64,000 nucleotides of DNA, taken from the NCBI RefSeq assembly GCF_032444005.1, contig NC_091283.1, positions 24,800,001 through 24,864,000 on the forward strand, read 5' to 3'. Shown piece after piece: positions 33,092 through 64,000 of this stretch. Source of the stretch: Ranitomeya imitator. Taxonomy: Eukaryota. The notes under the pieces are model-generated. The model did not search any database and was not told where the DNA came from. It saw only the letters and a list, made by a program, of their open reading frames with translations. Both the position numbers and the translations under genes were made by a program. Each line of letters opens with the position of its first letter. Within the stretch, counting starts at the first letter, position 1.

Positions 33092-35547
33092 TTAGAATCT
33101 TGCATCTTCTTCCTCTTTGATTTCCAGCTTTACAGTAATGTGATTAAAATCTTCTTGGTTTTCAGAAATGTCATCTACTGAATTATGAGGCTTTTCAGGT
33201 CGACTTGAGGGTCCACAATCGCCTGTTTCGCCGGCTGCGTGAGTTTTCTGGTGTTTGATGAGAGCAGACCTCCTTGCATAGCTCAGTCCACACACGGTGC
33301 ACATGAACGGCTTTTCTCCTGTATGAAGTCTCACATGTTCGACGAGCGACGATTTCCAGTTGAAGCTCTTGTCGCATTCAGAACAAGAGAATGGTTTCCT
33401 CTCTTTGTGGACAGCCTGATGCTTGATTAGTTTGGAACTGTCTGTGAAGCCTTGGCCACATTCTGAGCAAGTGTATGGCTTCTCCTCCTCGATGTGATCA
33501 CATTTGTGTCTATCTAGAAGAGATTTCTGACTAAAACTTTTCAGACACTGGGGACATGAAAATGACTTCTCCCCAGTATGTATTTTTCTATGGTTTATGA
33601 GAGCAGAGTTGACATTGAAGCATTTTCCACAGTCTGAACAGGAGTATGGTTTCTCCCCAGTGTGGCTGCTAACATGTTTGTCAAGATGCGATTTCTGAGA
33701 GAAGGCCTTTCCACACTCAGAACATGAAAACTGATTGACGTCCTTGTGAACTTTCTCGTGCTCAGTAAGGCTTGAGTATTGAGTAAAGGTTTTGCCACAC
33801 TCAGAACAGATATATGGCTTTTCGTCATCATGTAGGACCAGGTGCCGCTCCATATGGGCTTTCGTTAGAAAGCACTTCTCACAATGAAGGCATGAAAATT
33901 GCTTCTCTCCTGAGTGAGTTTTAACATGCTGCTTGAGACTGGATTTACTACAAAAGCATTTTTCACACTCCGGACAGGAGAACGTCTTCCTTCCCGTGTG
34001 GATTATGAGATGCCTGGTAAGATCTGACTTGGTGAAGAAATTTTTAGTACACTCTCGGCATGAAAATTGCTTCACTTTGTTGTGAACTCTCTCATGTTTC
34101 ACAACTTGACATTTCTGGCTAAAGCGCTTCTGACAGATAGGACATTCAAATGGTTTTTCTCCGGTGTGGATCCTCAAGTGTTTGATCAGGGCAGATTTCT
34201 GAGCAAAACGTTTGTCGCATTCAGAGCAGGCATGTGATTTCACTCCTGTATGAACATGCTGGTGATTGCCAAGGTTTGACATGCTGCTAAAACGCTTCCC
34301 ACAAATGGAGCAGGAATATGGCTTCTCCCCTGAGTGAGATCTTAGATGCTTCAGGAGTTCGGACTGGTAAGTAAAGACTTTCTCACAATCTTTATAAGGG
34401 CAGGTCTTCTTATTGTGGACCTTTTGGTGCTGGGTCAGCGCCAACTCTCTCGTAAAGCACTTTCCGCACTCGGCACAAGAAAAGCGAGCGTCTTCACAGT
34501 GCACCACCTGGTGCCGTATCAGATGCCTTTTGCGGCTAAACCTCTTATTGCAGCCTGAGCACGCATATGGCTTCTCTCCTGTGTGTGTCCTTTGATGCTG
34601 CTCCAGGTTAGATCGTTTATAGAAAGATTTATCACATTCAGAGCAAGAAAAAAGTTTGTCGATTGAGTGAACTCGCTGGTGCTCCACCAGAGAAGACTTC
34701 CAACGAAAAGTTTTTGTGCATTGCGAGCAAGAAAATGGCTTCTCACCAGTGTGAATCCTCACGTGTTCCAAAAGGGACGACTTCCACCGAAACCGCCTTT
34801 GGCATTCGGAACATGAAAACGGCTTATTACTAGAGTGCACCAGTTTATGTTTCGCGTGGTCGGCAGCGGATGAAGAACGAACACCACATTCCCAACAAAA
34901 GAAGAACTTCTCTGCAGAATGGGTTATTTTATGCTTCTCCAGATGTGACTTCTGCCTGAAACACCTCCCGCACATAGAACAGGTGTACGGCTTCTCACCC
35001 GTATGGATCCGCAAGTGTTTAACAAGGCCTGAACTTATGCTGAAGCTTTTGCCACATACGGTGCAAACATACGGTTTCTGCCCCCCATGGATTTTCTCAT
35101 GTATGATAAGATCGGACTTCTGCATGAAAAGCTTTCCACATTCCAAGCAAGAAAACGCTGTCTCTCCTTTGTGGATCCGACTGTGCAAGAAAAACGTTGA
35201 GTACTGTGTGAAACATTTTCCACATTCTGGACATATCAGCGGTTTTCGGTCAGAGTGAGTGACCTGATGCCTCACAAGATGCGATTTTGTGCTGTAACTC
35301 TTTCGACATTCATGGCAAAAGTATGGCTTCACAACGGCGAGGGATTTCTGGGGTTTTTTAAGAGCAAGCTTATTAGGGAAGGGCTTTTTGAGTTCAAAGA
35401 AGGGAAAAGATTGATTCCGCTTTTCTGTTTCAACAGGTTCGGCAGGTAGCAATAACTTGTCCTTATCTTCAGGATTTTCCCTTGTTGCTGGAGGAGTTGC
35501 TGAGGCTGCAGACAGGATACAGGGAGCCGGCTGCAATACATCTTCAT
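33092..35547 (-). CDS. KRAB zinc-finger gene, terminal exon with 25 C2H2 fingers
   Basis: Acceptor TTTTCAG|ATGAAG at 35547 (phase 1). Open frame to the stop at 33092. 25 fingers counted. Confidence 0.95.
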
Positions 35548-35798
35548 CTGAAAAAAATAGGGAAAAAATTATTTCTGTGCACAGAAACACTATGCAATGT
35601 TCATCGAAAAATGGAAAAAAAATTAAATTTTCTAATTTTGGAGCCGCTTCCAAACGCCCTTTTTAATGGGAACATCTGCAAGAAATTACAGACAACATGA
35701 AAAAAGAAAGCGCAAAATAAAGCACTCTCCGGTCAAGAGACGTTTCCATGTGACATTTACTCTACTGTCACTTTGTAACCAAAGATGATGAACCTTAC

Positions 35799-35900
35799 CT
35801 GGGCGACTCTGCGCTATCGTGTGCGGCCATCGCTCTGGGACCCAGGGCTCCTCCATGTTTTCGATCTTTGCTATAATCTCGGGTTTTACAGTGACGTCAC
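35799..35900 (-). CDS. KRAB-B box exon
   Basis: 102-nt phase 1-1 exon GDVTVKPEIIAKIENMEEPWVPERWPHTIAQSRP with AG acceptor and GTAAG donor. Confidence 0.88.
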
Positions 35901-36249
35901 CTTGGTGATAGAAGACACAGAAGTGAATCTTTCCATCAGATGTGATGGTCGAGGAAGATCTCAGAAATCGATCTCGATTCTCTGCATTTCTTATAAATTG
36001 CTACTTACAGGGGTCGTCCCACTAGAATCTCCCCTGTCCATGTGTGTTAGGCTCATTGACCTAATTGTCTGGATTCCCCGCCCGGGACCCTTCCACCTGC
36101 ACCTTGCCTTATAGAGGAGAATATGCACCACACATGATCTGAAGCTGCAGCCGGATCCATGTGCCGCCATACAGGCTCCTGCGTGGTTATAGCGCGCCGA
36201 AGGGCCAAAATGAAACCCCAAAGACCTACAAGATGAGAGGACGACCTAC

Positions 36250-36373
36250 CAACAGAGACGAGACATCGGAAGTTTTCCATCATCACTTCCTTATATATTT
36301 CTTTCTCTGTCAGCTGCAGACATCGCCACTCCTCCTGCGAGAAATACACCGCTACTTCATCAAAGGTCGGCAT
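36250..36373 (-). CDS. KRAB-A box exon
   Basis: MPTFDEVAVYFSQEEWRCLQLTEKEIYKEVMMENFRCLVSV; polypyrimidine-CAG acceptor, phase-1 donor GTAGGT. Confidence 0.93.
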
Positions 36374-36427
36374 CTGCGGGAGGAAGAGGAACAAAGCTGA
36401 TGTTTGTATATAATGTGTGTGTACATA

Positions 36428-38028
36428 CACTACTGTTCAAAAGTTTAGGGTCACTTAGAAATGTCCTTATTTTTGAAAGAAAAGCAGTTTTTTCCAACGA
36501 AGCTAATATTAAATCATTCAGAAATACACTCTATACATTGTTAATGTGGTAAATGACTATTTTAGCTGCAGACGTCTGGTTTGTAATGCAATATCTTCAT
36601 GGGTGTATAGAGGCTCATTTCCAACAACCATCACTCCAGTGTTCTTATGGTACTTTGTGTTTGCTAACTGTGTAAGAAGGCTAATGGAGGGTTAGAATAC
36701 TCTTGAAAACCCTTGTGCAAGTATGTTAGCACAGCTGAAAACAGTTTGGCTGATTAGAGAACCTATAAACCTGACTTTCCTTTGGAGAATCTGGAGCATA
36801 ACGTTTGTTGGTTCCATTAAACTCTCAAAATGGCCAGAAAAAAAGAACTTTCATGTGAAACTCGACAGTCTATTCTTGTTCTTAGAAATGAAAGCTATTC
36901 TATGTGAGAAATTGCCAAGAAACTGAAGATTTCCTACAACGGTGTGTCCTACTCCCTTCAGAGGAGAGCACAAACAGGCTCTAACCAGAGTAGAAAGAGA
37001 AGTGGGAGGCCCCGCTGCATAACTGAGCAACAAGACAAGTACATTAGAGTCTGAAGTTTGAGAAATCGACGGCTCACAGGTCCTCAACTGGCAGCTGCAT
37101 TAAATAGTACACGCTAAACACCAGTGTCAACGTCTACAGGGAAGAGGCGACTCCGGGATGCTGGCCTTCAGGGCAGAGTGCCAAAGAAAAAGCTATATCT
37201 GAGATTGGCTAATAAAAGGAAAAGATTAATATGGGCAAAAGAACACAGACATTGGACAGAGGAAGATTGGAAAAAAGTGTTATGGACAGACAGATCCAAG
37301 TTTGAAGTGTTTGGATCACACAGAAGAACATTTGTGAGATGCAGAACAGCTGAAAAGATGCTGGATGAGTGTGACGCCATCTGTCAAGCATGGTGGAGGT
37401 AATGTGATGGTCTGGGGTTGCTTTGGTGCTGGTAAAGTGGGAGATTTGTACAAGGTAAAAGGGATTTTGAATAAGGAAGGCTATCACTCCATTTTATAAT
37501 GCCATGCCATATCCTGTGGACAGTGCTTGATTGGAGCCAATTTCATCCTACAACAGGACAATGACCCAAAGCCACCTCCAAATTATGCAATAACTATTTA
37601 GGGAAGAAGCAGCAGCTGGTATCTATCTGTAATGGAGTGGCCAGCGCAGTCACCAGATCTCAGCCCCATTGACCTGTTGTGGGAGCAGCTTGACCGTATG
37701 GTGCCAAAAAAGTGCCCATCAACCAAACCAACTTGTGGGAGAGGCTTCTGGAAGCATGGGGGGAAATGTCTACAGATTATCTCAGCAAATTAACTGCTAG
37801 AATGCCAAAGGTCTGCAATGCTGGAATTGCTGCAAAGGAGCATTCTGTGACGAAAGCAAAGTTTGAAGGAGAAAATTATTATTTCAAAGAAAAATCTTTT
37901 TTTCGAACCTTGTCAATGTCCGGATGAGATTTTACATTCATTTGGCAACTCGTATGATTAATAAAAGTATGAGTTATCATGGAAAACACAAAATTGTCTA
38001 GGTGACCCTAAACTTTGGAACTGTAGTG
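36428..38028 (+). mobile_element. Degenerate Tc1-like transposon
   Basis: TA-flanked TIRs CACTACTGTTCAAAAGTTTAGGGTCAC / GTGACCCTAAACTTTGGAACTGTAGTG. Broken transposase (KRLIWAKEHRHWTEEDWKKVLWTD). Confidence 0.88.
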
Positions 38029-47600: not shown

Positions 47601-47728
47601 CGTGCTGTGAGCCGAGTACAAACCGCATCTGGCAGGAGCCGCACACGTGGATATGACCGTGTACACACCGCCCCGTGAACATCGCTGGGGAATACATCGG
47701 CGATACAGAACGCACATCTGCTTGCAGA

Positions 47729-47930
47729 ACTACAAGTCCCAGAAGTAACTCTGAGTCTATCCAGAAATACAGGGGGAAGAGAACCGACTGGAATTTGTAG
47801 TTCCCCACCAGGAGCGACGCTAAACCGCCTCCTCCTCACCTGCACCAACCCCGGGAGCAGCGACACAGGACCTGCGGTGACGTCATGGTCATGTGACAAG
47901 TCACAAGTGAGGGTGGAGTCAGAGCTGTGC
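47729..47930 (-). promoter_or_regulatory. Candidate promoter/first exon of the KRAB-ZNF gene
   Basis: ACTACAAGTCCCAGAA (47729-47744) and reverse ACTACAAATTCC (47790-47801), both ZNF143/SBS-like; CRE TGACGTCA at about 47878; donor CAG|GTGAG at 47840; CpG-rich. Confidence 0.55.
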
Positions 47931-48529
47931 GCGTCCCAGTGTAGCCGGGCCCAACACTTTTCTCCATAGAGCGATCGTTGTAACTTCCTGCAGTCACCAC
48001 TAGGGGGAGATTTATTATTCCTGAGCTGTTATCGCCAAGCTTCTATCCAGCTCCCCCTGGTGGCCGCTCCGTAGCTGCGCACCTTACTGTAGCTGCTTCT
48101 ATAAATGTGTAAGTATATAGCAATTGTCTGTCCTTATGCAGAAGAAAAAGTGGCTGCAGTGTAAAGCATGGAGGGCAGAACAGTGGTCTGAGCCTGTAGT
48201 GAAATTATTCATCTAAACTACCCCAGAAAAGCATCCATTTGCTCTTCATATGCACGACCAGCCTTATTTTCACCTTATGTTGTCCCTGGTGCTCACACAA
48301 TCTGGTCTCCCTGTCCAATTCTGATGTATGGCCATTATAGGGGGAGAAAAAATGTCCGACATTCAGGACCCCATATATGAGCCAAGTGCACTGCAGTAAA
48401 GATGTCCAAACAGATTAGATCACTACTGGCGCACGCACGCACGCACGCACGCACACACTTCTCACTGGGGAGCTCCGGCTACTTCAGGTAAACGTTTTCT
48501 CACCTCAGTGCTGGTTTCACAGCTACCAA

Positions 48530-49850: not shown

Positions 49851-50218
49851 ACGACTAAACATAAGCTGCCTGGTATCCTTTCATGTCTGTGTGCGGTGTA
49901 TAGGAGACGCCACCGCGGCTCGTCTCCACCCAGTAGCTCAGAGACACCTGAACGTTAGAGGAAAGGTGACATATTGCCCCGACGCGGCATTAGGGTCAGT
50001 CTATATTACCAGTAACGAGACTGAACAGGAAAGCTTTATGGAGGCTTTTACTTCACCCCCGTCTGCTGTCATACAGGGGGTCCCGGGAACACCGGGCGGG
50101 GGAGGGCGTAGAAGTGAAGTTTAGCTATAACGGGCGAGCAGAACAATCTGGAAGAAACGCTGGTGATATAAATAATGTAAAAAAAATAATATATATAAAA
50201 ATATACACAGCTCAGCGG

Positions 50219-50852
50219 CTACAAGTCAAAGTAGTCCGGAGAGTGTCTGTGACTCCGGGGCGACGGGTCGATGGAGGAGGGGGATGACGATGGAGAAGAA
50301 TTTGGCTGCAGACCATGGGTGAACTCCGGCTCCCGAGATCTCTGGGGGGCCGGGGGTTTGTGTGATGGGTCGCGTGCTGGCATCGAGTGTTGGGGGGACG
50401 TTGGCCGCTGGTGTCGTTGTCTCCGGGCGGGTTGTGGTGGGATCCGGATGGAGTTGTTGCCGTGCCGATGTGTGACCGGCGGCGCCCCCATGAACCGCTT
50501 CACCACGTGCATCATGCTCAACTGCATGTCGATTTTTCTCTCCTCGGGAACTTTTTTGACAAAAGGCAGGAGGCTCCTCAGGAAGGTCTCGTCCGGGTCG
50601 CTTCTCTCCTCGCTCTTCTCTCTCAGGGTGTTCATGACGTCCAGCAGGTGCGTTTCCCAGTCGCTCTCTGACGCTTTTGCAGCTTTTTTCCGGTTTCTTT
50701 TTGGTGCCGGGGGTGTAGGTGCTGGCGGCAGCGCTGGCGGAGGAGGAGGAGGAGTGCAGCTCGCTGACCCTTCTACGTCTATCGGCTGCAGAATTTCCAC
50801 AGGTTCCCGGTTATTGCTGCTGGATGTGGGCGCAGCGCTGCCAGCGAAGGGG
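50219..50852 (-). CDS. MADF/BESS gene exon 3: Pro/Ser-rich linker, basic NLS-like PKRNRKK, BESS-like motif
   Basis: Acceptor TCTTTAG|C at 50852 (phase 2, matches the exon 2 end). DPDETFLRSLLPFVKKVPEERKIDMQLSMMHVV. Confidence 0.8.
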
Positions 50853-51005
50853 CTAAAGACAGAAACAGCAGTCACACACCAGAATACACAATGCGCCGTC
50901 CATTAAAGCTCCTCTTACTCTACAGTTTAGAAATCTTTCTCATACTTGGACGCATTATACTGTATCCCTCAGTGCATCTAGTCATAACGGTACAAACTGG
51001 TGATC

Positions 51006-51628
51006 CTCCTCAGGCAAGCAATTCCAGATTCTCACTGCCCTAACAGTAAAGAATCCTCTTCTATGTTGGTGGAAAAACCTTCTCTCCTCCAGACGCAAAG
51101 AATGCCCCCTTGTGCCCGTCACCTTCCTTGGTATAAACAGATGCTCAGAGAGATATTTGTATTGTCCCCTTATATACTTATACATGGTTATTAGATCGCC
51201 CCTCAGTCGTCTTTTTTCTAGACTAAATAATCCTAATTTCGCTAATCTATCTGGGTATTGTAGTTCTCCCATCCCCTTTATTAATTTTGTTGCCCTCCTT
51301 TGTACTCTCTCTAGTTCCATTATATCCTTCCTGAGCACCGGTGCCCAAAACTGGACACAGTACTCCATGTGCGGTCTAACTAGGGATTTGTACAGAGGCA
51401 GTATAATGCTCTCATCATGTGTATCCAGACCTCTTTTAATGCACCCCATGATCCTGTTTGCCTTGGCAGCTGCTGCCTGGCACTGGCTGCTCCAGGTAAG
51501 TTTATCATTAACTAGGATCCCCAAGTCCTTCTCCCTGTCAGATTTACCCAGTGGTTTCCCGTTCAGTGTGTAATGGTGATATTGATTCCCTCTTCCCATG
51601 TGTATAACCTTACATTTATCATTGTTAA
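51006..51628 (-). mobile_element. CR1 ORF2 C-terminal fragment truncated at both ends
   Basis: KVIHMG...EKDLGILV...KANRIMGCIKRG...RPHMEYCVQFWAP...RGHSLRLEE...RAVRIWNCLPEE. Confidence 0.92.
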
Positions 51629-51664
51629 GTAATGCTCTAAAATGCTTTATTGGAATGAACCAGC

Positions 51665-52410
51665 AGCGGCACTCAGCTGTACTTGTGGCTGCGCTCGGCT
51701 GTACATCTGGCTGCATTCAGCTGTACTTGGCAGTAAACTGGGCTGCGCTCGGCTGGATGTGCTGCTGTGCTTGGCGGTACTTCCACCTGCACTCGGCTGT
51801 GACTGTGCTCGGCTGTACATGTCTGCAGTCGGCTGTACTCAGCAGAACATGAAGCTGTACTCGGCGGTACATCTGGCTGCACTCGGCTCTGTGCACGGCT
51901 GCGCTGGGCTGTACTCGGCTGTATATCTGGCTGCACTCGGCTGTATGTGTGGCTGCGCTGGGCTGTACTCGGCTGTACATCTGGCTGCACTCGGCTGTAT
52001 GTGCGGCTGCGCTGGGCTGTACTCGGCTGTACATCTGACTGCACTCAGCTGTATGTGCGGCTGCGCTGGGCTGTACATCTGGCTGCGCTGGGCTGTACTC
52101 GGCTGTACATCTGGCTGCACTCGGCTGTATGTGCGGCTGCGCTGGGCTGTACTCAGCAGTACATCTGGCTGCGCTTGTCTGGACGTGCAGCAGTACTCAG
52201 CAGAACGTGAGGCTGCGCTCGGCTGTATGTGCGGCTGCGCTGGGCTGTACTTGGCTGTACATCTGGCTGCGCTGGGCTGTACTCGGCTGTACATCTGGCT
52301 GCACTCGGCTGTATGTGCAGCTGCGCTGGGCTGTACTCAGCAGTACATCTTGCTGCGCTTGTCTGGACGTGCAGCTGTACTCAGCAGAACGTGCGGCTGC
52401 GCTCGGCTGT
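51665..52410. repeat. Degenerate GCT-rich minisatellite (GGCTGCGCTGGGCTGTACTCGGCTGTACATCT type)
   Basis: Tandem 10/20/30-bp subunits. Confidence 0.88.
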
Positions 52411-52568
52411 CTCCAGAAGTCTCAACAACAATAATAAATGGAAATCTGCATGATTCTAACAAGGAATGTAAGAGCAGTTCTCAGGACGGTCGGGGGTCCC
52501 AGTGATCAGACCACTACCGATCAGGTGGGGCATATGTGATACCTTTAAATGTTAGGAATATCCCTTTA

Positions 52569-52917
52569 GGCTGTGTGCACACGCTGCGGATTTTGTTGCG
52601 GATCCCCTGCAGTTTTGACGCTGAGGATTCACAGCAGTTTTCCCTGAGTTTACAGAACCATGTAAACCTATGGAAAACAAAATCCGCAGTGCACATGCTG
52701 CAGAAAAAAACATGTGGAAACGCTGCGTTGTTTATTCCGCAGCATGTCAATTCTTTGTGCGGATTCCGCTGCGGTTTACACCTGCTCCATAATAGGAATC
52801 CGCAGGTGTAAAACCGCAGGTGGAATACGCAAAAAAAAAAAAGCGGTAAAACGCAGTGCGGTTTGCCTGTGGATTTACCAAAATCCGCAGGACTTTCCGC
52901 AACGTTTGCACGTAGCC
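52569..52917. mobile_element. Harbinger-like MITE (a related copy lies in the opposite orientation at about 42945-43240)
   Basis: TTA|GGCTGTGTGCACACG ... CGTTTGCACGTAGCC; antisense ORFs are nearly identical to those at 42979-43263. Confidence 0.75.
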
Positions 52918-53347
52918 TCAAAGAGGTGACACTAAACAGCTTCTGATCTTGAGGCAGCCAGAGCAGAATTCACAGTTCTGCTGCATTTCCCTAAATTCAG
53001 GGTCTCCTTTGACTGCCTGTGTCACGCGCCGCCCCCAAGGCCGCGACCAGACACGTGATGGGGCCGCATTACTCGCTGCTCCTTTATAAGGCGCCATACT
53101 TCATCTCCTCCCTGGTGATAGTGTTGGTGTCCCAGAAGTAAAGCGTTCCTTCTGATTCACTGCTCCTCCAGCGTGGCATCTGTCCTAACAGGACAATCCC
53201 TTTAAGTGGGGCGGTCACATTACCAGCTTGTTCCTCCGGAGAGTCGCCCTTCAGGAGGAGAGCAGATTTTTTTCCCCGGGGGCATTGCCTGGCTTCTGAG
53301 ACCCCTACAGTAGATGGGTGGTCTCCATGAGACGCAGCGGCACTCAC

Positions 53348-53510
53348 TCTCTCAGCCTCATGGTGGGCTCCAGGAACAGCAGACCCTCGTAGTGAACGTA
53401 TTTCCTCCTCCGAAGTGTCGGGAGCCCGCAGTTCTCCAGCTTCTTCTGCAGGGTCAGCTCCCGCCTGAAGCAATCCTTCAGCGACCTCCACCGCGTCTGG
53501 ATTTCTTTGG
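53348..53510 (-). CDS. MADF/BESS gene exon 2 (C-half of MADF domain)
   Basis: CCGCAG| acceptor, (A)KEIQTRWRSLKDCFRRELTLQKK...RRRKYVHYEGLLFLEPTMRLR, donor GA|GTGAGT; 163 nt, phase 1-2. Confidence 0.85.
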
Positions 53511-54299
53511 CTGCGGACGGTATGTAATAAAGATGAGCAGCTGAATAACGGAGGACAGAGATAGGGTTAAACTTAGAAATTACACAAGTTATTACACTCT
53601 GGAGGGATATATTGGTACCGATCTGCCTGATCATCAACGTCTCTGGGGCCTCAAATAAAACCTATTAAAATTGTCTATCGAGCATATAAAGTAACGAAAA
53701 GTAGAGAGCGACCAATCACATCCATCCATCCAATGCTGGAATCTGCAGATTATGGGGACACGGACTAGCACGGTGTATGAGTGTTCTCTCTGTATCACAC
53801 AGTGTATGCTGATACTTCGGCCGGCAATGTTTTATGGGTGTACTTTATTTCTAGCGCTGTGTTTGGAGATACCTAGGACGGCGCTGTGCACTGGTTATGG
53901 GCGGACGCTGTCCGGCACTGTGCATAGTGATACATGGGCTGGCACTGGGTGGGGGTGTACTCTCTTTTTAAAAAGCTTTTATTGAAAGATTCCACAAAAT
54001 AAGATAACAAACATAATAAACAAATAATCCGTATATCAAAGTAAAGTAAACAAATAAATGAAACATAACCTTCAGTATAATATATTCTACCATTGCACTT
54101 CTTAACCAGCAGAGTCTTTATAAAAAAGCTCGTACCAGGTGAGGTTATAATAGACACATGATATTAATCCTACACAAATCATCACTCATGGTCCAGAATG
54201 GAGAGATATCAGGGAAGAGACCATGGCGCCAGGAGCCAAATGTGTCAATGGAGAGTTACACCACCTTTCCCAAATCTGAAATTTCTGGGGACATCCTCT

Positions 54300-55760
54300 G
54301 TTTGGGTGCACGCTGACTGGCACTGAGTATGGGGACACTAAGGTCTGTGGGTGCACGCTGACTGGCACGGAGTATGGGGACACTAAGGTCTGTGCTGCAC
54401 GCTGACTGGCACCGAGTATGGGGACACTAAGGTCTGTGGGCGCACGCTGACTGGCACCGAGTATGGGGACACTAAGGTCTGTGGGTGCACGCTGACTGGC
54501 ACGGAGTATGGGGACACTAAGGTCTGTGCTGCACGCTGACTGGCACCGAGTATGGGGACACTAAGGTCTGTGGGCGCACGCTGACTGGCACCGAGTATGG
54601 GGACACTAAGGTCTGTGGGCGCACGCTGACTGGCACTGTGTATGGGGACACTAAGGTCTGTGGGCGCACGCTGACTGGCACTGAGTATGGGGACACTAAG
54701 GTCTGTGGGCGCACGCTGACTGGCACTGAGTATGGGGACACTAAGGTCTGTGGGCGCACGCTGACTGGCACTGAGTATGGGGACACTAAGGTCTGTGGCG
54801 CACGCTGACTGGCACTGAGTATGGGGACACTAAGGTCTGTGGGCGCACGCTGACTGGCACCGAGTATGGGGACACTAAGGTCTGTGGGCGCACGCTGACT
54901 GGCACTGTGTATGGGGACACTAAGGTCTGTGGGCGCACGCTGACTGGCACTGTGTATGGGGACACTAAGGTCTGTGGGCGCACGCTGACTGGCACTGAGT
55001 ATGGGGACACTAAGGTCTGTGGTGCACGCTGACTGGCACCGAGTATGGGGACACTAAGGTCTGTGGGCGCACGCTGACTGGCACTGAGTATGGGGACACT
55101 AAGGTCTGTGGGCGCACGCTGACTGGCACTGAGTATGGGGACACTAAGGTCTGTGGGCGCACGCTGACTGGCACTGAGTATGGGGACACTAAGGTCTGTG
55201 GGCGCACGCTGACTGGCACTGAGTATGGGGACACTAAGGTCTGTGGGCGCACGCTGACTGGCACTGAGTATGGGGACACTAAAGTCTGTGGGCGCACGCT
55301 GACTGGCACCGAGTATGGGGACACTAAGGTCTGTGGGTGCACGCTGACTGGCACCGAGTATGGGGACACTAAGGTCTGTGGGCGCACGCTGACTGGCACT
55401 GAGTATGGGGACACTAAGGTCTGTGGGCGCACGCTGACTGGCACTGAGTATGGGGACACTAAGGTCTGTGGGCGCACGCTGACTGGCACTGAGTATGGGG
55501 ACACTAAGGTCTGTGGCGCACGCTGACTGGCACTGAGTATGGGGACACTAAGGTCTGTGGGCGCACGCTGACTGGCACTGAGTATGGGGACACTAAGGTC
55601 TGTGGGCGCACGCTGACTGGCACTGAGTATGGGGACACTAAGGTCTGTGGGCGCACGCTGACTGGCACTGAGTATGGGGACACTAAGGTCTGTGGTGCAC
55701 GCTGACTGGCACTGAGTATGGGGACACTAAGGTCTGTGGGCACACGCTGACTGGCACGGA
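54300..55760. repeat. 45-bp minisatellite (GGGACACTAAGGTCTGTGGGCGCACGCTGACTGGCACTGAGTATG), about 32 highly homogeneous copies
   Basis: Direct reading; period 45. Confidence 0.96.
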
Positions 55761-56401
55761 GTATGGATATTCTCATTATCCGGATTCTTATTCTCAAGCT
55801 TTTTTGTTTATCATTTTGTTTCCAATCTGTATATATAATTGCCTAAGGGTCATTTTATTATTATTATTATTTATTATTATAGCGCCATTTATTCCATGGC
55901 GCTTTACATGTGAGGAGGGGTATACATAATAAAACAAGTACAATAATCATTTCCATCTTTCCGTCTGTCCTTCTGTCACGGATATTCATTGGTCGCGGCC
56001 TCTGTCTGTCATGGAAATCCAAGTCGCTGATTGGTCGTGGCAAAACGCCCATGACCATAGCGACGGGCACAGTCCGCCGGCAAAATGGCCGCTCCTTCCT
56101 CCCCGCAGTCAGTGCCCGCACCATTATCCCCTCCAGTCAGCCCTCACACAGGGTTAATGCCAGCGTTAATGGACCGCGGTGTAACGCACTCCATTAACGC
56201 AGCTATCTGCGTATGCAGCATCAATAGTAAAAATATCTAATGTTACAAATAATAATAAAAAAAAACAAAACGTTATTCTCACCCTCCGACGTGCACGGTG
56301 TCCTCGGCAGTGCAAGCGGCAGGTTCCGGTGCCAAGGATGCTATGTGAAAAGGACCTTCCATGACGTCACGTTCATGTGACCGCGACGTCATCACAGGTC
56401 C

Positions 56402-56649
56402 AGGTAAAGAAGCTGCGGAGACACCATCACGTGTTTCTCGACGCAAGCAGTGAATAGCCAGGCCTTTCCCCGGGAAAGACGTCGAGAAACACGTGATGGT
56501 GTCTCCGCAGCTTCTTTACCTGCATCTGCATATTTCCCATAAGGGATGGGGGCAGTGTTCTGGAATCACTGCGTTGAGAAACACGTGATGGTGTCTCCGC
56601 GGTGTTGGATGTTTTGGTCTCCCCGAGGCCAATCATCTGTGCCTTTATA
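56402..56649. mobile_element. 248-bp insertion with terminal inversion and 14-bp TSD (Penelope-like architecture)
   Basis: TSD GTCATCACAGGTCC at 56388-56401 and 56650-56663; about 42-bp perfect inverted arms in 56401-56522. Confidence 0.7.
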
Positions 56650-56774
56650 GTCATCACAGGTCCTGCACTCATACCAACCCTGGGACCGGAAGCTGCCGTG
56701 GACTACAAGCGACCCTCGGAAAGGTGAGTATATGTTTATTTTTTATTTTAAGTCTTTTTCAACTTGTTACATAC

Positions 56775-57572
56775 GTGGCTGGGCAATATACTACGTGGCT
56801 GGGCAATATACTACGTCGCTGGGCAACATACTACGTGGCTGGGCAATATACTACGTGGCTGGGCAATATACTACGTGGCTGGGCAATATACTACGTGGCT
56901 GGGCAACTGGGCAATATACTACGTGACTGGGCAACTGGGCAATATACTACGTGGCTGGGCAATATACTACGTGGCTGGGCAATATACTACGTGGCTGGGC
57001 AACATACTACGTGGCGGGGCAATATACTACGTGGCGGGGCAATATACTACGTGGCGGGGCAATATACTACGTGGCGGGGCAATATACTACGTGGCGGGGC
57101 AATATACTACGTGGCGGGGCAATATACTACGTGGCGGGGCAATATACTACGTGGCGGGGCAATATACTACGTGGCGGGGCAATATACTACGTGGCTGGGC
57201 AATATACAACGTGGCGGGGCAATATACTACGTGGCGGGGCAATATACTACGTGGCGGGGCAATATACTACGTGGCGGGGCAATATACTACGTGGCGGGGC
57301 AATATACTACGTGGCGGGGCAATATACTACGTGGCGGGGCAATATACTACGTGGCGGGGCAATATACTACGTGGCGGGGCAATATACTACGTGGCTGGGC
57401 AATATACTACGTGGCTGGGCAATATACTACGTGGCTGGGCAATATACTACGTGGCGGGGCAATATACTACGTGGCGGGGCAATATACTACGTGGCAGGGC
57501 AATATACTACGTGGCTGGGCAACATACTACGTGGCGGGGCAATATACTACGTGACTGGGCAATATACTACGT
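56775..57572. repeat. 20-bp minisatellite (GGGCAATATACTACGTGGCG/CT), about 39 copies, inside the Helitron-like element
   Basis: Direct reading. Confidence 0.96.
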
Positions 57573-57657
57573 GGACATGCATATTCTAGAATACCCGATG
57601 CGTTAGAATCAGGCCACCATCTAGTATTTACATAGCCACCATAAAGCCCAGTCTCAC

Positions 57658-57844
57658 CTTTGAGATTTTTCTCTCTTTCGCTGCATAGATCCCAATCTGG
57701 AACAACGACAGCGCAGATCTCATCCCACGCTTTCTTCTTCTTGTAGCGGTCCGCGTAGGAAGGCACTTTGGGGTCATAGAGCTCAGGACGATCGTGCACC
57801 ATCTGAATCAGCAGATCGATGTCGATGACCATTTTGGAAGACAT
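57658..57844 (-). CDS. MADF/BESS gene exon 1 (N-half of MADF/Myb-SANT domain)
   Basis: MSSKMVIDIDLLIQMVHDRPELYDPKVPSYADRYKKKKAWDEIC...EKNLK; phase-1 donor G|GTGAGA. The three exons total 984 nt = 327 aa + stop. Confidence 0.85.
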
Positions 57845-58004
57845 CCGGTGGACCCTGCTGTATTTCTCTCTTCCTGGCTCGTCATACAAAGAGGGAGGAG
57901 AAACCTTGCTACATAAATGTCACCATATCAAATTTCTAAACTGCAAATAAAATAAATGACATTGGTACAGATAGTACTGCATCCCTGCCTCTTCCTGTAT
58001 ATTG

Positions 58005-58455
58005 CGTAGGCACAGATAGTACGGCTTCCTGCAATAAATAGTAAAGGCACAGACAGTACTGCTTCCTGCGATAGTATAGGCACAGATAGTACTGCTTCCT
58101 GTAATAAATATTAAAAGGCACAGATAGTACTGCTTTCTGTAATAAAAAGTATAGGCACAGATAGTACTGCTTTCTGCAATAAGTTAGTATAGGCACAGAT
58201 AGTACTGCTTTCTGTAATAAATATTAAAGGCACAGATAGTACGGCTTCCTGCAATAAATGGTATAGGCACAGATAGTACTGCTTTCTGTAATAAATGGTA
58301 TAGGCACAGATAGTACTTCTAGCTGCAATAAATGGTATAGGCACAGATAGTACTGCTTCCTGCAATAAATGGTATAGGCACAGATAGTACTGCTTCCTGC
58401 AATAAATGGTATAGGCACAGATAGTACGGCTTCCTGCAATAAATGGTATAGGCAC
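58005..58455. repeat. 37-bp minisatellite (AGGCACAGATAGTACTGCTTCCTGCAATAAATGGTAT), about 12 copies
   Basis: Direct reading. Confidence 0.92.
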
Positions 58456-59434
58456 AGATCGCACTGTAGCCTAGTCCCTTCCTGCTTTATCCCTCACTCT
58501 AAGACCCCTTCACACGTACGTGACCGCAAATACGAACACACGCACACCCATTGTGTTCAATGGTATTGCGCACAGGTCAGGTTTTTACACAGACCATGTG
58601 AAAAACCCGCAGACATGTCAATTTTTTTTATCAGCAACACAGACAAAATGGGTGATGCGTGTGTCATCAGTGTGACGCGCGTGTCATCAGTGTGACACGT
58701 ACCAGGGCCTGGGAAGAAGCGATACAGTTCACGCTGTTCCCAAGAAATTACTGCTGAAGACAATTCATCATTGTCTCTTGGTTTCCCTGTGATCAGCGCC
58801 ACCCGGTGACTATGATGGAAGTTGAATTCGGCACCCGCTGTGTACATCCTGTGTAAAATAAAGAATTAAAGTAAACGGCGTTGGCTTCATAACCAGAAGA
58901 GGGAAAGTTAACGGATGGGGGTTGATGTTGATAATCTTGGACAATATCCTATAAGGTTCCCATGCTATTAATAACAGCTCACAGCTGTGTGCTTAGCCTT
59001 TGCTTGTGAATTTATGGGGGACCCCAGAAAAAAAATGACATAGGGTCCCTCTATAAATTCAAACCAGCAAAGGCTGTGGGTTGATATTAATAGCCTGGGA
59101 AGGAGCCAGAGATATTTTTCCCTCTCCCAGGCTATCAACATCAGCTCTCAGCCGCCCCAGAAACGGTACACCCATAAGATGACCAAATCTGGCACTTAGC
59201 CTCGCTCTTCCTACTTGCCATGCGTGCGCTGACAAGAGGGGTAAAAGGGTTGGGGTTGATGTCAGCTTTGTATTGGCAGCTGACAACAAGCCCATGGGTT
59301 AGTAATGAAGAGGCGTCTTTAAGACCCTCCGCAACAAGAATAAAATCCTTTATTTGAAATAAAACTCAACACCGTACTTTACACATTCATTTAAAAATAA
59401 CAAACAACCATTACACTTACCTTACGCCTTAAGA

Positions 59435-62400
59435 CTTTAAAGGTCCAGTAGAAAAGCGTGGTGTCTTAAGAAAACTAGAAGGAAACCGTAAAGTAAAACA
59501 GAAAACGAATGCTTAACTCCAAATCAAATCGCAGCACACATTGTTAACACCTCAAGAACCCCTAAAGACCGAGCTCATACCACAGAAGTTATAAATAAAT
59601 TTAAGCTTCTAAAATCATCTGTGGCATCAACTGAAGAATATTCCCGTCCTTTCACAACTTGTGACATTGAAATTGCCCTTGTTGATACAAAAAGTAACAA
59701 AGCTCCTGGATTTGATGGGATTCATCCCGAATTTCTCAAAAATTGTGGGCCTTTTGCGAAAAAATGGCTGGCAAAGTTCTTCTCAGATATCATGGAGAAT
59801 GCTCAAGTCCCCAGTTAATTAAAATAGGCAAAGATCATTGATTTGTTAAAACCTGGGAAGCCTGAAGATAATCCATGCTTTATTGAGTTGCCTATATTCG
59901 CTTTTAGAACGCTTAATCTATAACAAGATCAATTTAAAGATTTTCGACTCAATACCTGTAGAGCAAGCCGGCTTTAGACGTGATCGAAACTGCGGTGAAC
60001 AAGTTTTAGCCTTGATGACTTTAATCGAAGCTGAATTTCAAAAGAACAAGAAGGTCTCAGCGGCGTTCATCGATCTTTCTGCCGCATATAACACTGTGTG
60101 GAGGGAAGGACTTCTATACAAGTTTCCGAAGGTGATTCAATGTAAGAAAATGATGTACCTCTTGAATAATATGATTGCAAATCGAACCTTTCAACTTATC
60201 ATGGGTGATTCAACCAGTTGTAAGAAAACCTTAAACAATGGTTTGGCCCCAGGATCAGTGCTGGCACCTCTCCTGTTTGCCTTGTACCTAGCTGACATTC
60301 CTGACTCAATATCACAGAAATTTGGATACGCCGATGACTGGGCACTTGCTACAGAGAGCAAAACAATGGAGGAAGCAGAGGAGGTTCTAACAGAAGATCT
60401 CAGTGTAATGGGAAAGTATTTTCGACAATGGAGGCTAAAGCCCAATCCATCAAAAACGGAAGTATGTTGCTTTCATTTCCACAACGCAAGTGCAAGACTG
60501 AACTCAAAGTACATTTTGGAAGTCAACTTGTCAAAACACAACTACAATCCCAAGTATTTAGGCGTAATCCTTGATAGAAGCCTAACCATCAAATCTCACT
60601 TGGAAAAGACAGCACAGAAACTGAAAACACGCAATAATATTATTTAGAAACTCTGCGGATCCTCCTGGGGTTCTTCAACACCTGTCTTGAGAACATCTAC
60701 CCTTGCCTTGGTGTACTCTGCTGCAGAATATTGTGCTCCAGTATGGCTGAATAGTTGTCACGTGAATGCAATCGACAATCAGCCGAACAACTCTATGTGC
60801 ATAATATCTGGTGCTATCAGACCTACGCCCGTCCACTGGTTACCTGTCTTGAGCCACATCGCACCTGCAAATCTGAGAAGACAAAAGCTCCTACTTAAAG
60901 AATACACCAAAGTAGTGAATAAGGAAAATCTCCAAATATCCAAGATGTTCTAATACAGCGACTGAAATCAAGACATCCACCCCTCCGAACCGCAATTACC
61001 CTGTATGAACAGGATTTCAATTTAGAAGAGAAATGGCGTGAACTTTGGTTCAGTGCAGTAGACGGTGAGCCTCAAACGTTTCCTCACTTTCAATATCCAC
61101 CACCAGGCTTCAATCTGATAAGGAAAACCTGGGTCACTCTGAATCGTATCAGAACAAACTTTGGTGTCGGTGCAGATCTTTTTTTTGTTCAAATAGATTT
61201 TTATTAAGAATAACGAGGCAATTAACATGTTACATTCACATTTTCAATACAAAGTTTCCCCCCCCCACCCCTTCAAACAACCCCCTTCAAACCCAAGACC
61301 CCCCGCCCCCACCCAACAAAGCAGCTCACCTTGCTAGTTACTTCCATCATTAAAACAATAGAATATCCAATCCCTCAACCGATCATATAAGCCACACTTT
61401 ACATTACTATCCCATAGCAATCCATGAAGACCACATTTTATTGAACATTTCAGTTTTCCCTCTCTTCTTATAAATCCCTTTTCCAGTGTCAGGCCGTTTC
61501 ACATACTGGAGGAACTCTCCTCTTGACGGCGGCTCTTCCCTAATCCAGTTTCGAGCTATTACCTTCCTAGCCATGTATAACAATCTGGCTATAGCTATCT
61601 TTAGGTGTTTATCCACCCCAATCTCATCCACGCATCCCAACAAACAGACAACTGGGTCCCTTGGCACCGTGCAACCATACGCACCTTCCATACGACTCAA
61701 AACTACCACCCAGAAGGCAGCCAACCTCGGACATGTCCACATCATATGGAGTATATCAGCATCTGCAGTTTTACACCTCGGACATTCAGAGTCATTACGC
61801 AATCCTGCCTTGTGTAACACCATCGGAGACTTATAAACCCTGTGTATCACATAGAGCTGTGACAGTCTATACGGTTCACTCAGCGACAGTCTTGGGACCC
61901 ATTCCAACACCGACTCCCAAGTCTCATTCTCCATTGGACCCAGATCCCTCTCCCACTTAGCTCTTGCCATTATTGGAAACCCCAATAGGAAAGTGTGCAA
62001 CAAATCTTTATACAGAGTGGATATGACCCCTCCAGTAGTCCCATCATTACACACATACTCCAGTACTATATCCCTTTGAATCCTAATACCTCCGTCCCTA
62101 CTCTGAGCTCCAAAGGCATGCCTCATCCGCAAATACTGATACTCCCCTGCAGTCCCAAGACCAAATTCCGCCTGCAATTGGGAAAATTATTTCAATTCAC
62201 CTCGCTCAATTATTTGATACACATACTGAATACCAGCCACTCTATCAGTACCCCCAGTGCCTCAAATTCCTTCAGGTTGTTGTTATGCCATAGCGGCGAG
62301 TATCTAGTCAAGTCCGTGATCCCACGTATATGCCTCAATCTACTCCACAGCTTGCGTATCAACAGCACAGTCGGATGTAACTTCCCCAGACTCTCCAAGG

Positions 62401-63150
62401 ATCCATCCTCCAAACATTGTACTACTGGCCTTCTTTTTGTCACCACTTCCATCAACCGCTGTACCGCTCCAGATGACCCTTCATGAGCCCAGCCCTTTAA
62501 ATGTTGACTCTGGGCTGCAAGAAAATACAATTCAGGGTTAGGCAATGCCAGGCCCCCATCATCCTTGGGTCGCTGAAGTGTCTCCAGTCTGATACGCGGA
62601 TGCTGTCTCCCCCATACAGAGAGTTGATCTGTCTAAATTTCCCGCGTGGTATCCAAACCGGCGCATTGTGGAGAATATACAATATTTTCGGCATCAGAAT
62701 CATTTTGATAAGATTCACCCTACCTACCACAGACAAATGCAGTTTAAGCCAAGCATCCGCTTTTGCCCTAAGGACACCTAAGATTGGAGTCAGATTTCTA
62801 TGTATATAATCAGTGACCGGCATAGATACCCATATTCCAAGGTACTTAAATTTACTCGTCACCACCAGTCGCCCATGTCTGTGCAGATCTTATACACAAG
62901 TGGGAACAATCTGACTCCTGCCTGTGACTGTGGAGCCGACCGTCAAAGAATTCAGATCATTATCGAGGAGTGTCCCCTCAGATCTTACACTGGTGACAAG
63001 TATGATTTCTACACTGGAAATGACAATGTTATTGCATACATAGAAAACCGCGATATCCAACTCGGATTTCCGTTCCTTTGTTCTTTTCAAACACTGTTTA
63101 CGGTTTGTTATTTATTCTTATATGATGTTAAAATATACGTTCATACGATT
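59435..63150 (+). mobile_element. Degenerate 5'-truncated Vingi/Ingi-like LINE (59435-61180 and 62876-63150), split by an L1
   Basis: KAPGFDGI, QAGFRRDRNCGEQVLAL, FIDLSAAYNTVW, GSVLAPLLF, YADDWALA, LALVYSAAEYCAPVW, WLPVLSHIAP; C-terminal CDCG...EECP; 3' CATACGATTAAAAA. Confidence 0.8.
61181..62875 (-). mobile_element. 5'-truncated L1/Tx1-like LINE
   Basis: T-rich tail at 61181. ORF pieces FKYLGIW, GRVNLIKMILMPK, CPRCKTADADILHMMWTCP. 16-bp TSD TGTC[G/T]GTGCAGATCTT (61165-61180, 62876-62891) with one mismatch. Confidence 0.9.
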
Positions 63151-63631
63151 AAAAACCTTACGCCTAATCCACTGAAGCCCATGTCCCCTGTAAAAATAAA
63201 AACACCAAAGTAATAAACAACCATTTCCCTGCATGTCCTATGTGAAGATAATCCAATTGTCCCTTGACGAGTCTAGCACTATAACATCTACAGGCTGAAC
63301 AGTGGCATGGTGCGAGCGTTCAGTCTGCCATCCAGCAGAGACACCGAGATGTGCGTGATGGCACATTCACCTCACTGACGTCACCGCTAGCGTGAGAAAG
63401 TTCTCACATGGATACATTATCTTCACGTCAGTCAGGCAAGGCATTTGGTTATTATTTTTGCTTTTTCACTGGGGACATGGGCATCGGAGGATTATCTTCA
63501 CGTCGGACAGGTGAGAGATATGGTTATTTATTATTTGTTTGTTTGTTTGTTTTTTTTACAGAGGACATGGGCTTCAATGGATTATAGGCGTGAGTATAAC
63601 TTTGTTTTTTATTTTTAATTAAATGTGTTAA

Positions 63632-64000
63632 CCCCTTTCTGCCAGCTGACGGAATAGTACGTCAGCTGGCAGATCCCCTGCTTTGAGGTGGGCTCCGGCG
63701 GTGAGCCCACCTCAAAGCCGCGACATGTCAGCTGTTTTGTACAGCTGACATGTGCGCGCAATGAGCGCGAGCGGAATCGCGATCCGCCCGCGCCCATTAA
63801 CTAGTTAAATGCCGCCGTCAAGCGCTGACAGCGGCATTTAACTAGCGCTCCCACTGCTGACCCCCGGTTTTTTTTGTGGTGTCAAATAAAATTGGTATAC
63901 TTTTGGTAATTATTTTTTGCGTTGTGTGGTGATCCTACAATTATGTGCATGTACCTGTTTTCTTCTCTATGGTGCCCACTGCTGACCCCCGTCACATGAT
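63632..64000. mobile_element. Left end of a piggyBac-like non-autonomous element
   Basis: TTAA|CCCCTTTCTGCCAGCTGACG...CGTCAGCTGGCAG terminal hairpin; right end not seen in the window. Confidence 0.6.

What the first reader, a model, noticed from the sequence alone, without database searches (positions are those of the whole stretch)
50219..57844. Intact three-exon MADF + BESS-like gene with no transposase: candidate domesticated Harbinger DNA-binding gene
Seen: three exons with matching phases (1 and 2) splice to an uninterrupted 327-aa protein comprising a MADF (Trp-spaced Myb/SANT-like) domain, a Pro-rich linker, a basic NLS-like patch and a BESS-like helix pair. The introns (2.5 and 4.1 kb) have absorbed a CR1, MITEs, a Helitron-like element, a PLE-like insert and three VNTRs while the exons stayed clean. 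Known: PIF/Harbinger transposons encode a Myb/SANT/MADF protein plus a DDE nuclease, and both have been domesticated (for example NAIF1 and HARBI1); MADF-BESS factors are best known from insects (Adf-1). No nuclease or enclosing TIRs are seen here. Inference: a host-retained transcription or chromatin factor, co-oriented with and directly upstream of a KRAB-ZNF cluster, possibly binding the Harbinger MITEs that are abundant here.
Basis: partly seen in the sequence, partly recalled or inferred. Interest (0 to 1): 0.7.

Follow-up and report, generated by a model that had tools for sequence, protein, structure and literature searches.

The report
Frog MADF gene from Harbinger transposon
The three exons are real, spliced and conserved, but they are only the last part of a longer frog gene whose DNA-binding module has the same build as the helper gene of a Harbinger jumping gene, so this is a tamed transposon gene of a known kind, not a stand-alone 327-residue gene.

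Summary
The three minus-strand exons exist and splice as predicted. Pfam finds MADF split over exons 1-2 and BESS in exon 3. RNA-type contigs from four runs (three organisms) skip 50852>53348 at GT..AG and leave the genome at the 53510 acceptor.

The 327-aa model is incomplete. The Ranitomeya variabilis ortholog has 495 aa. Its residues 150-495 are these exons, and its residues 1-149 have no match in the window, so the upstream exons lie beyond 64000. ATG 57844 is internal, and the exon starts at a conserved acceptor (first base 57873).

Orthologs sit at one locus each in at least 12 neobatrachian frogs. dN/dS against Eleutherodactylus is 0.08-0.16. No TIRs or DDE nuclease are nearby.

A multi-copy Xenopus MADF gene lying beside a DDE_Tnp_4 transposase aligns end to end (E 3e-35). 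It has the same three exons (190/163/640 against 187/163/634 nt, phases 1 and 2) and the same start position. This supports a Harbinger origin. A damselfly MADF-BESS gene shares the layout and the domain tree is unresolved, so the direction of transfer is inferred.

In other frogs the shared 5' exons are modelled onto alternative MADF cassettes. The scan had noted another MADF-BESS gene elsewhere in this genome, at a different locus.

The parts
57658..57873 (-). Exon A1 (216 nt, phase 1 at both ends). It encodes GREKYSRVHR, then the internal Met (ATG 57844-57842), then the first half of MADF (57811-57662). The acceptor AG is at 57875-57874 and the donor GT at 57657-57656.
   Evidence: Sequence. 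Pfam MADF 1-52/84. 100% identical to residues 150-221 of R. variabilis P0167. The CAG acceptor is conserved in Eleutherodactylus and Nanorana.
53511..57657 (-). Intron (4147 nt). It holds VNTRs at 54303-55766 (45-nt unit, 33 copies) and 56772-57574 (20-nt unit, 39 copies), and a small insert with inverted arms at 56395-56600.
   Evidence: RNA contigs carry no match to 53513-53700, the only part of this intron that was laid.
53348..53510 (-). Exon A2 (163 nt): second half of MADF (53505-53371).
   Evidence: Sequence. Pfam MADF 44-84/84. Covered by contigs of four runs. 100% identical to P0167 residues 222-275.
50853..53347 (-). Intron (2495 nt). It holds a LINE-like ORF at 50982-51716, a VNTR at 51669-52410 and a high-copy repeat at 52520-52882.
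   Evidence: The joint 50852>53348 (skips 2495 nt, GT..AG on the minus strand) is seen in contigs of X1, X5 and X10, and shifted by one base in X14. VNTR.
50219..50852 (-). Exon A3, coding part (634 nt including TAG 50221-50219). It holds the Pro-rich linker, the basic patch KRNRKKAAK (50701-50675), BESS (50599-50501) and a disordered Ser/Pro tail ending in YFDL. The 3' UTR runs on below 50219, at least past 50100.
   Evidence: Pfam BESS 23.3 bits. Contigs run from 50100 to 50852. Helices predicted at the BESS position in the ortholog.
57874..64000 (-). Part of the long upstream intron of the same gene. It holds no N-terminal coding exon, only a VNTR at 58007-58466 and reverse-transcriptase fragments at 59850-62186.
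   Evidence: tblastn of P0167, P0170 and P0166 residues 1-149 finds nothing in the window. RVT_1 hits. The R. variabilis gene range is 42.5 kb.
33095..36436 (-). Neighbouring KRAB zinc-finger gene on the same strand, downstream: KRAB box at 36056-36436 and a 21-finger exon at 33095-35662. This is context, not part of the MADF gene.
   Evidence: Pfam KRAB 68.6 bits. zf-C2H2, 21 stretches.

Best explanation
The three exons are the last three exons of a longer host gene of neobatrachian frogs. I call this MADF-BESS module 'cassette A'. The gene is the ortholog of Ranitomeya variabilis LOC143806208 and Bufo gargarizans LOC122945997, both deposited as 'uncharacterized protein'.

The module descends from the accessory (Myb-like/MADF) gene of a PIF/Harbinger transposon. 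It keeps that gene's three exons, intron phases, start-codon position, MADF - linker - BESS-like order and C-terminal F.DL ending. An acceptor 29 nt upstream of the old ATG now splices it onto upstream host exons. These exons encode an acidic region rich in psi-K-x-E motifs (hydrophobic residue-Lys-x-Glu) and lie outside this window.

Inferred mechanism: MADF binds DNA sequence-specifically, BESS mediates protein contacts, and the N-terminal region supplies the effector part. The product would therefore be a nuclear transcription or chromatin factor.

Shown here: the exons, the splicing of intron 2, the domains, conservation, purifying selection, the absence of transposon ends and nuclease, and homology to a transposon-borne gene.
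Inferred: the direction of descent, DNA binding, and the function of the N-terminal region.
For: - Splice sites and phases.
- MADF and BESS above Pfam gathering scores. Complete MADF (55.3 bits) and BESS in the ortholog.
- Spliced contigs in four runs from three organisms. All in-exon indels are multiples of 3 (+21, -12, +12, -6).
- Exon-1 HMMER search: frog proteins of 413-552 aa carry the match at residues 127-260. They are RefSeq single-locus genes.
- P0167 residues 150-495 map onto the three exons at 100%, 100% and 85% identity. Residues 1-149 are absent from the window.
- The gene range is 42.5 kb in R. variabilis.
- The same exon set is found in Nanorana and Eleutherodactylus DNA.
- dN/dS is 0.08, 0.16 and 0.135 for the three exons against E. 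coqui.
- The acceptor is conserved.
- No TIRs and no DDE nuclease.
- Xenopus P0094 is present at six loci at 98% identity or more. It lies 2 kb from a DDE_Tnp_4 gene and aligns end to end with the cassette at E 3e-35.
- P0094 has exons of 190/163/640 nt with phases 1 and 2.
- Within the protein set gathered here, the best non-self matches of P0094 are frog host MADF-BESS genes.
Against: - A damselfly Adf-1-like gene has the same three-exon layout. The layout is therefore a trait of this MADF-BESS lineage and not proof of descent from a frog Harbinger.
- The MADF-domain tree does not resolve the deep branches.
- BESS is not detected by Pfam in the Xenopus transposon protein; it is only aligned in register.
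- The exon A1 to A2 joint and the link to upstream exons were not seen directly in this species. The laid stretch ended at 53700, and the upstream exons are outside the window.
- An internal promoter that yields the 327-aa product is not excluded.
- Microsynteny between species was not tested.
Confidence: 0.78

Rival explanations
1. It is a stand-alone three-exon gene. Transcription would start just upstream of 57873-57931 and translation at ATG 57844, giving a 327-aa MADF-BESS protein, alone or alongside the long form.
For: - The ATG sits at the position of the start codon of the transposon gene and of the damselfly gene.
- 327 aa is the size of such proteins.
- One contig (X5) runs about 60 nt past the acceptor, and I could not see what those letters are.
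Against: - The ten codons before the Met are conserved as protein (GREKYSRVHR, identical in R. variabilis; GREKDGRVHR in E. coqui).
- A conserved polypyrimidine-CAG acceptor precedes them.
- All deposited orthologs carry the N-terminal region.
- Bufo has lost the Met.
Confidence: 0.1
2. It is a non-autonomous or decaying Harbinger copy. The MADF gene would still be part of a mobile element whose transposase was lost or lies on the flanks.
For: Harbingers with MADF partners are noted as young and multi-copy in this genome (earlier notes). Xenopus carries such a gene in a real element.
Against: - No TIRs enclose it and no DDE_Tnp_4 lies within 26-64 kb.
- Orthologs exist at one locus per species, from Hyloidea to Ranoidea and Myobatrachidae.
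- dN/dS is 0.08-0.16.
- The introns have grown to 2.5 and 4.1 kb with nested repeats.
- It is spliced onto host exons in other species.
- No multi-copy close relative was found.
Confidence: 0.02
3. The direction is the reverse. An old host MADF-BESS gene with this three-exon layout (as in insects) was inherited by frogs, and frog Harbingers captured a copy of it as their accessory gene.
For: The same exon layout occurs in a damselfly gene with no transposase within 3 kb. The tree is unresolved. Some insect proteins score as high against the cassette as the Xenopus transposon protein does.
Against: - A Myb-like/MADF second gene is a general trait of the PIF/Harbinger superfamily (PMC9710019, PMC9392472). 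Capture in frogs would therefore need a replacement of the resident gene.
- Among the hits whose source was looked up, the vertebrate ones were all frogs. This patchy spread fits a transposon origin.
- The damselfly gene may itself be transposon-derived.
Confidence: 0.1

Closest known systems
MADF accessory gene of a Xenopus laevis PIF/Harbinger element (P0094, LOC121397962 and five near-identical loci)
   Same: - Three exons of almost the same sizes and the same phases.
- Start at the same position.
- A complete MADF split at the same codon.
- A linker and a BESS-like block in register.
- A C-terminal F.DL ending.
- 28% identity end to end, about 45% in MADF.
   Different: - P0094 is multi-copy and sits beside a DDE_Tnp_4 transposase. 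The window gene has one locus per species and no nuclease.
- The window gene is spliced onto host 5' exons.
- Its BESS passes Pfam's cut-off, whereas that of P0094 does not.
NAIF1 and MSANTD1-4, vertebrate genes derived from the Harbinger Myb-like gene (PMC9392472)
   Same: Host genes made from the Harbinger DNA-binding partner. No transposase, conserved, under purifying selection.
   Different: - Those genes date to the base of jawed vertebrates or sarcopterygians and match Myb_DNA-bind_4/5.
- This gene was found only in frogs among the hits whose source I looked up.
- It matches MADF (55 bits) and BESS, and scores below the cut-off for Myb_DNA-bind_4/5.
Teleost ADF-1L (PMC11893794) and the insect MADF genes co-domesticated with PIF transposases (PMC9710019)
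   Same: MADF proteins proposed to be Harbinger-derived host factors. The insect cases have dN/dS around 0.18, as here.
   Different: - No adjacent domesticated transposase is seen here.
- This gene is a frog lineage.
- It is fused to extra 5' exons.
Frog 'transcription factor Adf-1-like' genes of 236-256 aa (P0012, and P0177 in R. imitator)
   Same: Closest paralog family, 43-46% identical over MADF, linker and BESS. It shares the motif KEIQTRWRSLKDCFRREL.
   Different: - These are short stand-alone proteins without the N-terminal region.
- They sit at a different locus, beside ADRM1 in Bufo.
Drosophila Adf-1 and the MADF-BESS family
   Same: Domain order: MADF at the front, BESS behind.
   Different: About 30% identity. 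No orthology. Function has been studied only in flies.

Membership tests
MADF domain proteins (Pfam PF10545) | Match to the MADF profile above the gathering score, over the whole domain | tested here: met
   Exon 1 covers profile 1-52 (36.9 bits) and exon 2 covers 44-84 (23.9 bits); cut-off 22. The ortholog, identical in this part, covers 1-84/84 at 55.3 bits.
MADF domain proteins (Pfam PF10545) | Spaced tryptophans and a helical Myb/SANT-like fold | tested here: met
   W50, W61 and W80 are invariant in 25 aligned cassettes. The AF2 model has helices 19-27, 43-57, 66-99 and 114-123 with block-mean pLDDT of 79 to 97. No solved-structure match better than E 3.
MADF domain proteins (Pfam PF10545) | Sequence-specific DNA binding | not testable with these tools
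   Needs DAP-seq, PBM or ChIP.
BESS motif (Pfam PF02944) | Match above the gathering score; two helices | tested here: met
   23.3 bits against a cut-off of 21 in exon 3, residues 85-117. Helices 211-224 and 228-246 in the model, with block-mean pLDDT of 73 to 88.
Domesticated transposon gene | Homology to a protein carried by a bona fide element | tested here: met
   P0094 lies beside DDE_Tnp_4 and is multi-copy. E 3e-35 end to end. Same exon structure.
Domesticated transposon gene | No TIRs, target-site duplication or transposase at the locus | tested here: met
Domesticated transposon gene | Orthologs at one conserved site in several species | tested here: inconclusive
   There is one locus per species in at least 12 frog species. 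The same exon set is present in Nanorana and E. coqui DNA.
Domesticated transposon gene | Purifying selection and expression | tested here: met
   dN/dS 0.08-0.16. In-frame indels only, and spliced contigs. In the tail, the listed differences from two related organisms give about 0.5.
Autonomous or decaying PIF/Harbinger element | TIRs, a DDE_Tnp_4 nuclease gene, multiple near-identical copies | tested here: not met
NAIF1 / MSANTD family | Myb_DNA-bind_4 or Myb_DNA-bind_5 as the best domain; orthologs across jawed vertebrates | tested here: not met
   20.3 and 19.5 bits, both below the cut-offs, against 55.3 bits for MADF. Among hits whose source was looked up, the vertebrate ones were all frogs.
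Locus with shared 5' exons and alternative DNA-binding 3' cassettes (lola / mod(mdg4) type) | One 5' exon set spliced to two or more alternative terminal cassettes | not testable with these tools
   Seen only in deposited models of other frogs. The 5' part of this locus lies outside the window.

The most novel reading that the evidence does not exclude
The frog locus would be a vertebrate counterpart of Drosophila lola or mod(mdg4). One acidic N-terminal region, rich in SUMO-type motifs, would be alternatively spliced to two or three tandem MADF-BESS DNA-binding cassettes of transposon origin. The window holds the distal cassette. In toads, a splice inside the MADF domain even swaps its second half. 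One gene would thereby yield factors with different DNA specificities, perhaps aimed at Harbinger-derived repeats.
Probability: 0.4. Interest if true: 0.65.

Novelty: new member of a known kind. Interest (0 to 1): 0.5.

Why it matters
Known vertebrate genes made from the Harbinger DNA-binding partner (NAIF1, MSANTD1-4) are ancient and have lost most traces of their origin. This frog gene still shows the transposon gene's exon plan and start codon, buried inside a longer host gene. That records how a transposon gene can be captured: a new acceptor arose in its old leader. It also gives a frog-specific DNA-binding factor to test against the Harbinger MITEs that fill these genomes. The gene itself is already present in public annotations as an uncharacterised protein, so the gain is in interpretation and not in the discovery of a new kind of element.

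Tried and rejected
- **Word search with exon 3:** no hit, because the orthologs (413-552 aa) fall outside the tool's length limit. This is not evidence of absence.
- **N-terminal exons in the window:** regex and relaxed tblastn searches found none.
- **Inverted repeats around the gene:** only chance pairs and intron-internal pairs.
- **MADF-domain tree of 50 rows:** the A family (with one Bufo chimeric isoform inside it) and the short Adf-1-like family each come out as a group, but the deep nodes are open, so the tree cannot place the Harbinger protein.
- **PDB by sequence:** only spurious prolactin rows.
- **Foldseek against PDB with the whole model:** nothing below E 3; a weak match to the Zeste DNA-binding domain.
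- **The search of earlier findings by sequence, and by words on cassettes:** blank.
In Bufo the paralog lies beside ADRM1, and the R. imitator and E. coqui products are not on record.
- **Cassette C of Bufo (second half of P0001):** no match in the window's intron.
- **Joined sequence:** The deposited ortholog P0167 stood in for the full protein.
- **One exception:** a script briefly concatenated the three exons of the deposited Xenopus gene, only to find the boundaries that reproduce its deposited product. Nothing was saved or printed.


Full report
**1. The observation**

On the minus strand, the three stretches 57844-57658, 53510-53348 and 50852-50219 are open in one continuous frame. Both introns start with GT and end with AG. 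The lengths are 187, 163 and 634 nt, so the intron phases are 1 and 2, giving 327 codons before the TAG at 50221-50219.

- Pfam places MADF profile positions 1-52 in exon 1 (36.9 bits), positions 44-84 in exon 2 (23.9 bits), and BESS 1-33/35 in exon 3 (23.3 bits). Each is above its gathering score, and the two MADF halves meet at the splice.
- The three intronic VNTRs are real.
- No inverted repeats enclose the gene.
- No Harbinger nuclease domain was found in the long ORFs, or in 92 ORF pieces of at least 75 aa from 26-64 kb. Those gave only reverse transcriptase, a Tc1 transposase, an endonuclease fragment and one KRAB box.

**2. Expression and splicing**

Exon 3 is held by twenty small contig sets. 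Each of the four laid holds 36-66 million letters, far too little for a frog genome. The tool only guesses that they are RNA, but the intron-less joints make them transcript assemblies.

I laid four of them on 50100-53700: two match the window almost exactly and are taken to be its species (one is labelled organism A, the other carries no organism label), plus organism B and organism C.
- In each run one contig covers exon 3, skips 50852>53348 (2495 nt, GT..AG on the minus strand; shifted by one base in the organism C run) and covers exon 2.
- Each then leaves the genome at 53512, which is the acceptor plus two ambiguous letters, and runs on for 64, 274, 83 or 19 letters.
- The second intron is therefore shown directly. 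The first is shown only by the break point.
- Organisms B and C differ by about 6% in exon 3. Their four indels there (+21, -12, +12, -6) are all multiples of three.
- The differences listed for the tail are 8 synonymous and 12 non-synonymous on 75 and 225 sites, a ratio of about 0.5.

**3. The model is incomplete**

A word search with exon 3 found nothing. This was a length artefact. They are RefSeq or GenBank products of single loci in these species:
- Hyloidea: Bufo (two species), Dendropsophus, Rhinoderma, Engystomops, Eleutherodactylus, Anomaloglossus, Phyllobates, Ranitomeya variabilis.
- Myobatrachidae: Pseudophryne.
- Ranoidea: Staurois, Hyperolius, Pyxicephalus, Mantella, Nanorana.

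The R. variabilis protein P0167 (LOC143806208, 495 aa) maps onto the window as follows:

| P0167 residues | Window | Identity |
|---|---|---|
| 150-221 | 57874-57659 | 100% |
| 222-275 | exon 2 | 100% |
| 277-495 | exon 3 | 85% |
| 1-149 | no match anywhere | - |

- The frame upstream of ATG 57844 is open to 57919.
- The ten residues before the Met (GREKYSRVHR) are conserved.
- A polypyrimidine-CAG acceptor at 57875/57874 aligns with those of Eleutherodactylus and Nanorana.
- Bufo has Ile at the 'start' Met.
- In R. variabilis the gene spans 42.5 kb.

So the first exon is 57873-57658, the ATG is internal, and the 5' exons lie beyond the window's end.

**4. A host gene under constraint**

The same three exons, preceded by N-terminal exons, are present in Nanorana and Eleutherodactylus DNA. 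Nei-Gojobori estimates, summed exon by exon against E. coqui, give dN/dS of 0.08, 0.16 and 0.135. A search with the MADF-BESS part of the ortholog found only single-locus frog genes and no multi-copy family.

**5. Link to Harbinger**

Among the weaker hits is a Xenopus laevis protein of 330 aa (P0094), present at six loci at 98% identity or more.
- At one locus a 398-aa DDE_Tnp_4 gene lies 2 kb away in convergent orientation. This is a two-gene Harbinger.
- P0094 aligns with the cassette from its second residues to the BESS position (E 3e-35). Identity is about 45% in MADF, with the block F..L.P....VPE in register.
- Its gene has three exons of 190, 163 and 640 nt with phases 1 and 2, against 187 (counted from the ATG), 163 and 634 nt here.
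- It starts MSLTKLYVDTD against MSSKMVIDID, and ends FTDL against YFDL.

Caveats:
- A damselfly Adf-1-like gene has the same exon layout.
- Pfam does not call BESS in P0094.
- A maximum-likelihood tree of 50 MADF domains leaves the deep nodes open.
- Within the set gathered here, the best non-self matches of P0094 are the frog host families. That set was chosen by likeness to exon 1, so it is biased.

Descent from a Harbinger accessory gene is therefore the best reading but is not proven. Capture in the reverse direction keeps about one chance in ten.

**6. What it probably does**

The AF2 model of the ortholog's cassette gives a confident helical MADF (block-mean pLDDT 79-97, mostly 94-97) and helices at the BESS position (72-88). 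The linker and tail are disordered. From what is known of the family, MADF binds DNA and BESS mediates protein contacts. The N-terminal region of the orthologs carries several psi-K-x-E motifs in acidic surroundings; I read these as sumoylation-type sites, which is an inference. The likely product is a nuclear transcription or chromatin factor. Binding to Harbinger MITEs remains an untested idea.

**7. Known relatives and novelty**

- NAIF1 and MSANTD1-4 are the described vertebrate genes derived from the Harbinger Myb-like partner (PMC9392472).
- A teleost ADF-1L (PMC11893794) and insect MADF genes (PMC9710019) are further cases.
- This gene is none of them. Myb_DNA-bind_4/5 score below their cut-offs, and among the hits whose source I looked up the vertebrate ones were all frogs.
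- No paper in the searched library pairs MADF with frogs.
- The gene is nevertheless annotated in public records as an uncharacterised protein. I therefore class it as a new member of a known kind.
- The scan had earlier noted another MADF-BESS gene of this genome, in a parp2 intron. I could not connect it with the short paralog family found here.

**8. Seen in passing**

Deposited models of Bufo, Rhinoderma and R. variabilis join one 5' exon set to different MADF-BESS cassettes. One toad isoform switches cassettes inside the MADF domain. If this is real, the locus works like lola or mod(mdg4). It cannot be tested from this window.

Noticed in passing
outside the window (5' of 64000); deposited models of other frogs: One 5' exon set is modelled onto different MADF-BESS cassettes. 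Bufo gargarizans LOC122945997 gives products of 568, 491 and 512 aa with one start and ends at 31.5, 52.2 and 59.7 kb. Rhinoderma LOC142659953 has isoforms X2 and X4. R. variabilis has products of 559 and 495 aa. This is a lola/mod(mdg4)-like layout in a vertebrate.
   Followed up: partly
Bufo proteins P0001 and P0151 (no locus DNA): A toad isoform joins the first MADF half of cassette A to the second half, linker and BESS of another cassette. This is a splice inside the DNA-binding domain. The window's intron holds no match to that other cassette.
   Followed up: partly
window 33095-36436, minus strand: A KRAB box (36056-36436) and a 21-finger C2H2 exon (33095-35662) lie on the same strand, 14 kb downstream of the MADF gene.
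   Followed up: partly
protein P0006 (Anomaloglossus baeobatrachus): A frog protein combines KRAB boxes with three MADF domains, so MADF has entered KRAB-type repressor genes in frogs.
   Followed up: no
window 50947-51672 and 52520-52882: Intronic repeats (a LINE-like ORF and a short repeat) are covered by transcript contigs at summed depths in the thousands, against about 10 for the exons. These repeat families are highly expressed.
   Followed up: no
window 56395-56600: A small insert has 49-nt arms that are 96% complementary, plus a third 31-nt copy. This is the site of the 'miniature Penelope-like' note.
   Followed up: no
window 38377-39294, minus strand: A Tc1/Sleeping Beauty-type transposase ORF (HTH_SB, HTH_Tnp_Tc3_2, DDE_3), 298 aa open.
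   Followed up: no
window 40001-42000 and 44001-48000: Blocks with G+C of 0.62-0.67 and strong negative GC skew hold very long ORFs without any Pfam match (for example 44597-47656, 1019 aa). They are probably satellite or minisatellite arrays.
   Followed up: no
L004 3001-8372 (Hetaerina americana): A damselfly Adf-1-like gene starts MSSTRVY and has the same three-exon plan as the frog cassette and the Xenopus Harbinger gene. Either the plan is ancient or this insect gene is also transposon-derived.
   Followed up: partly
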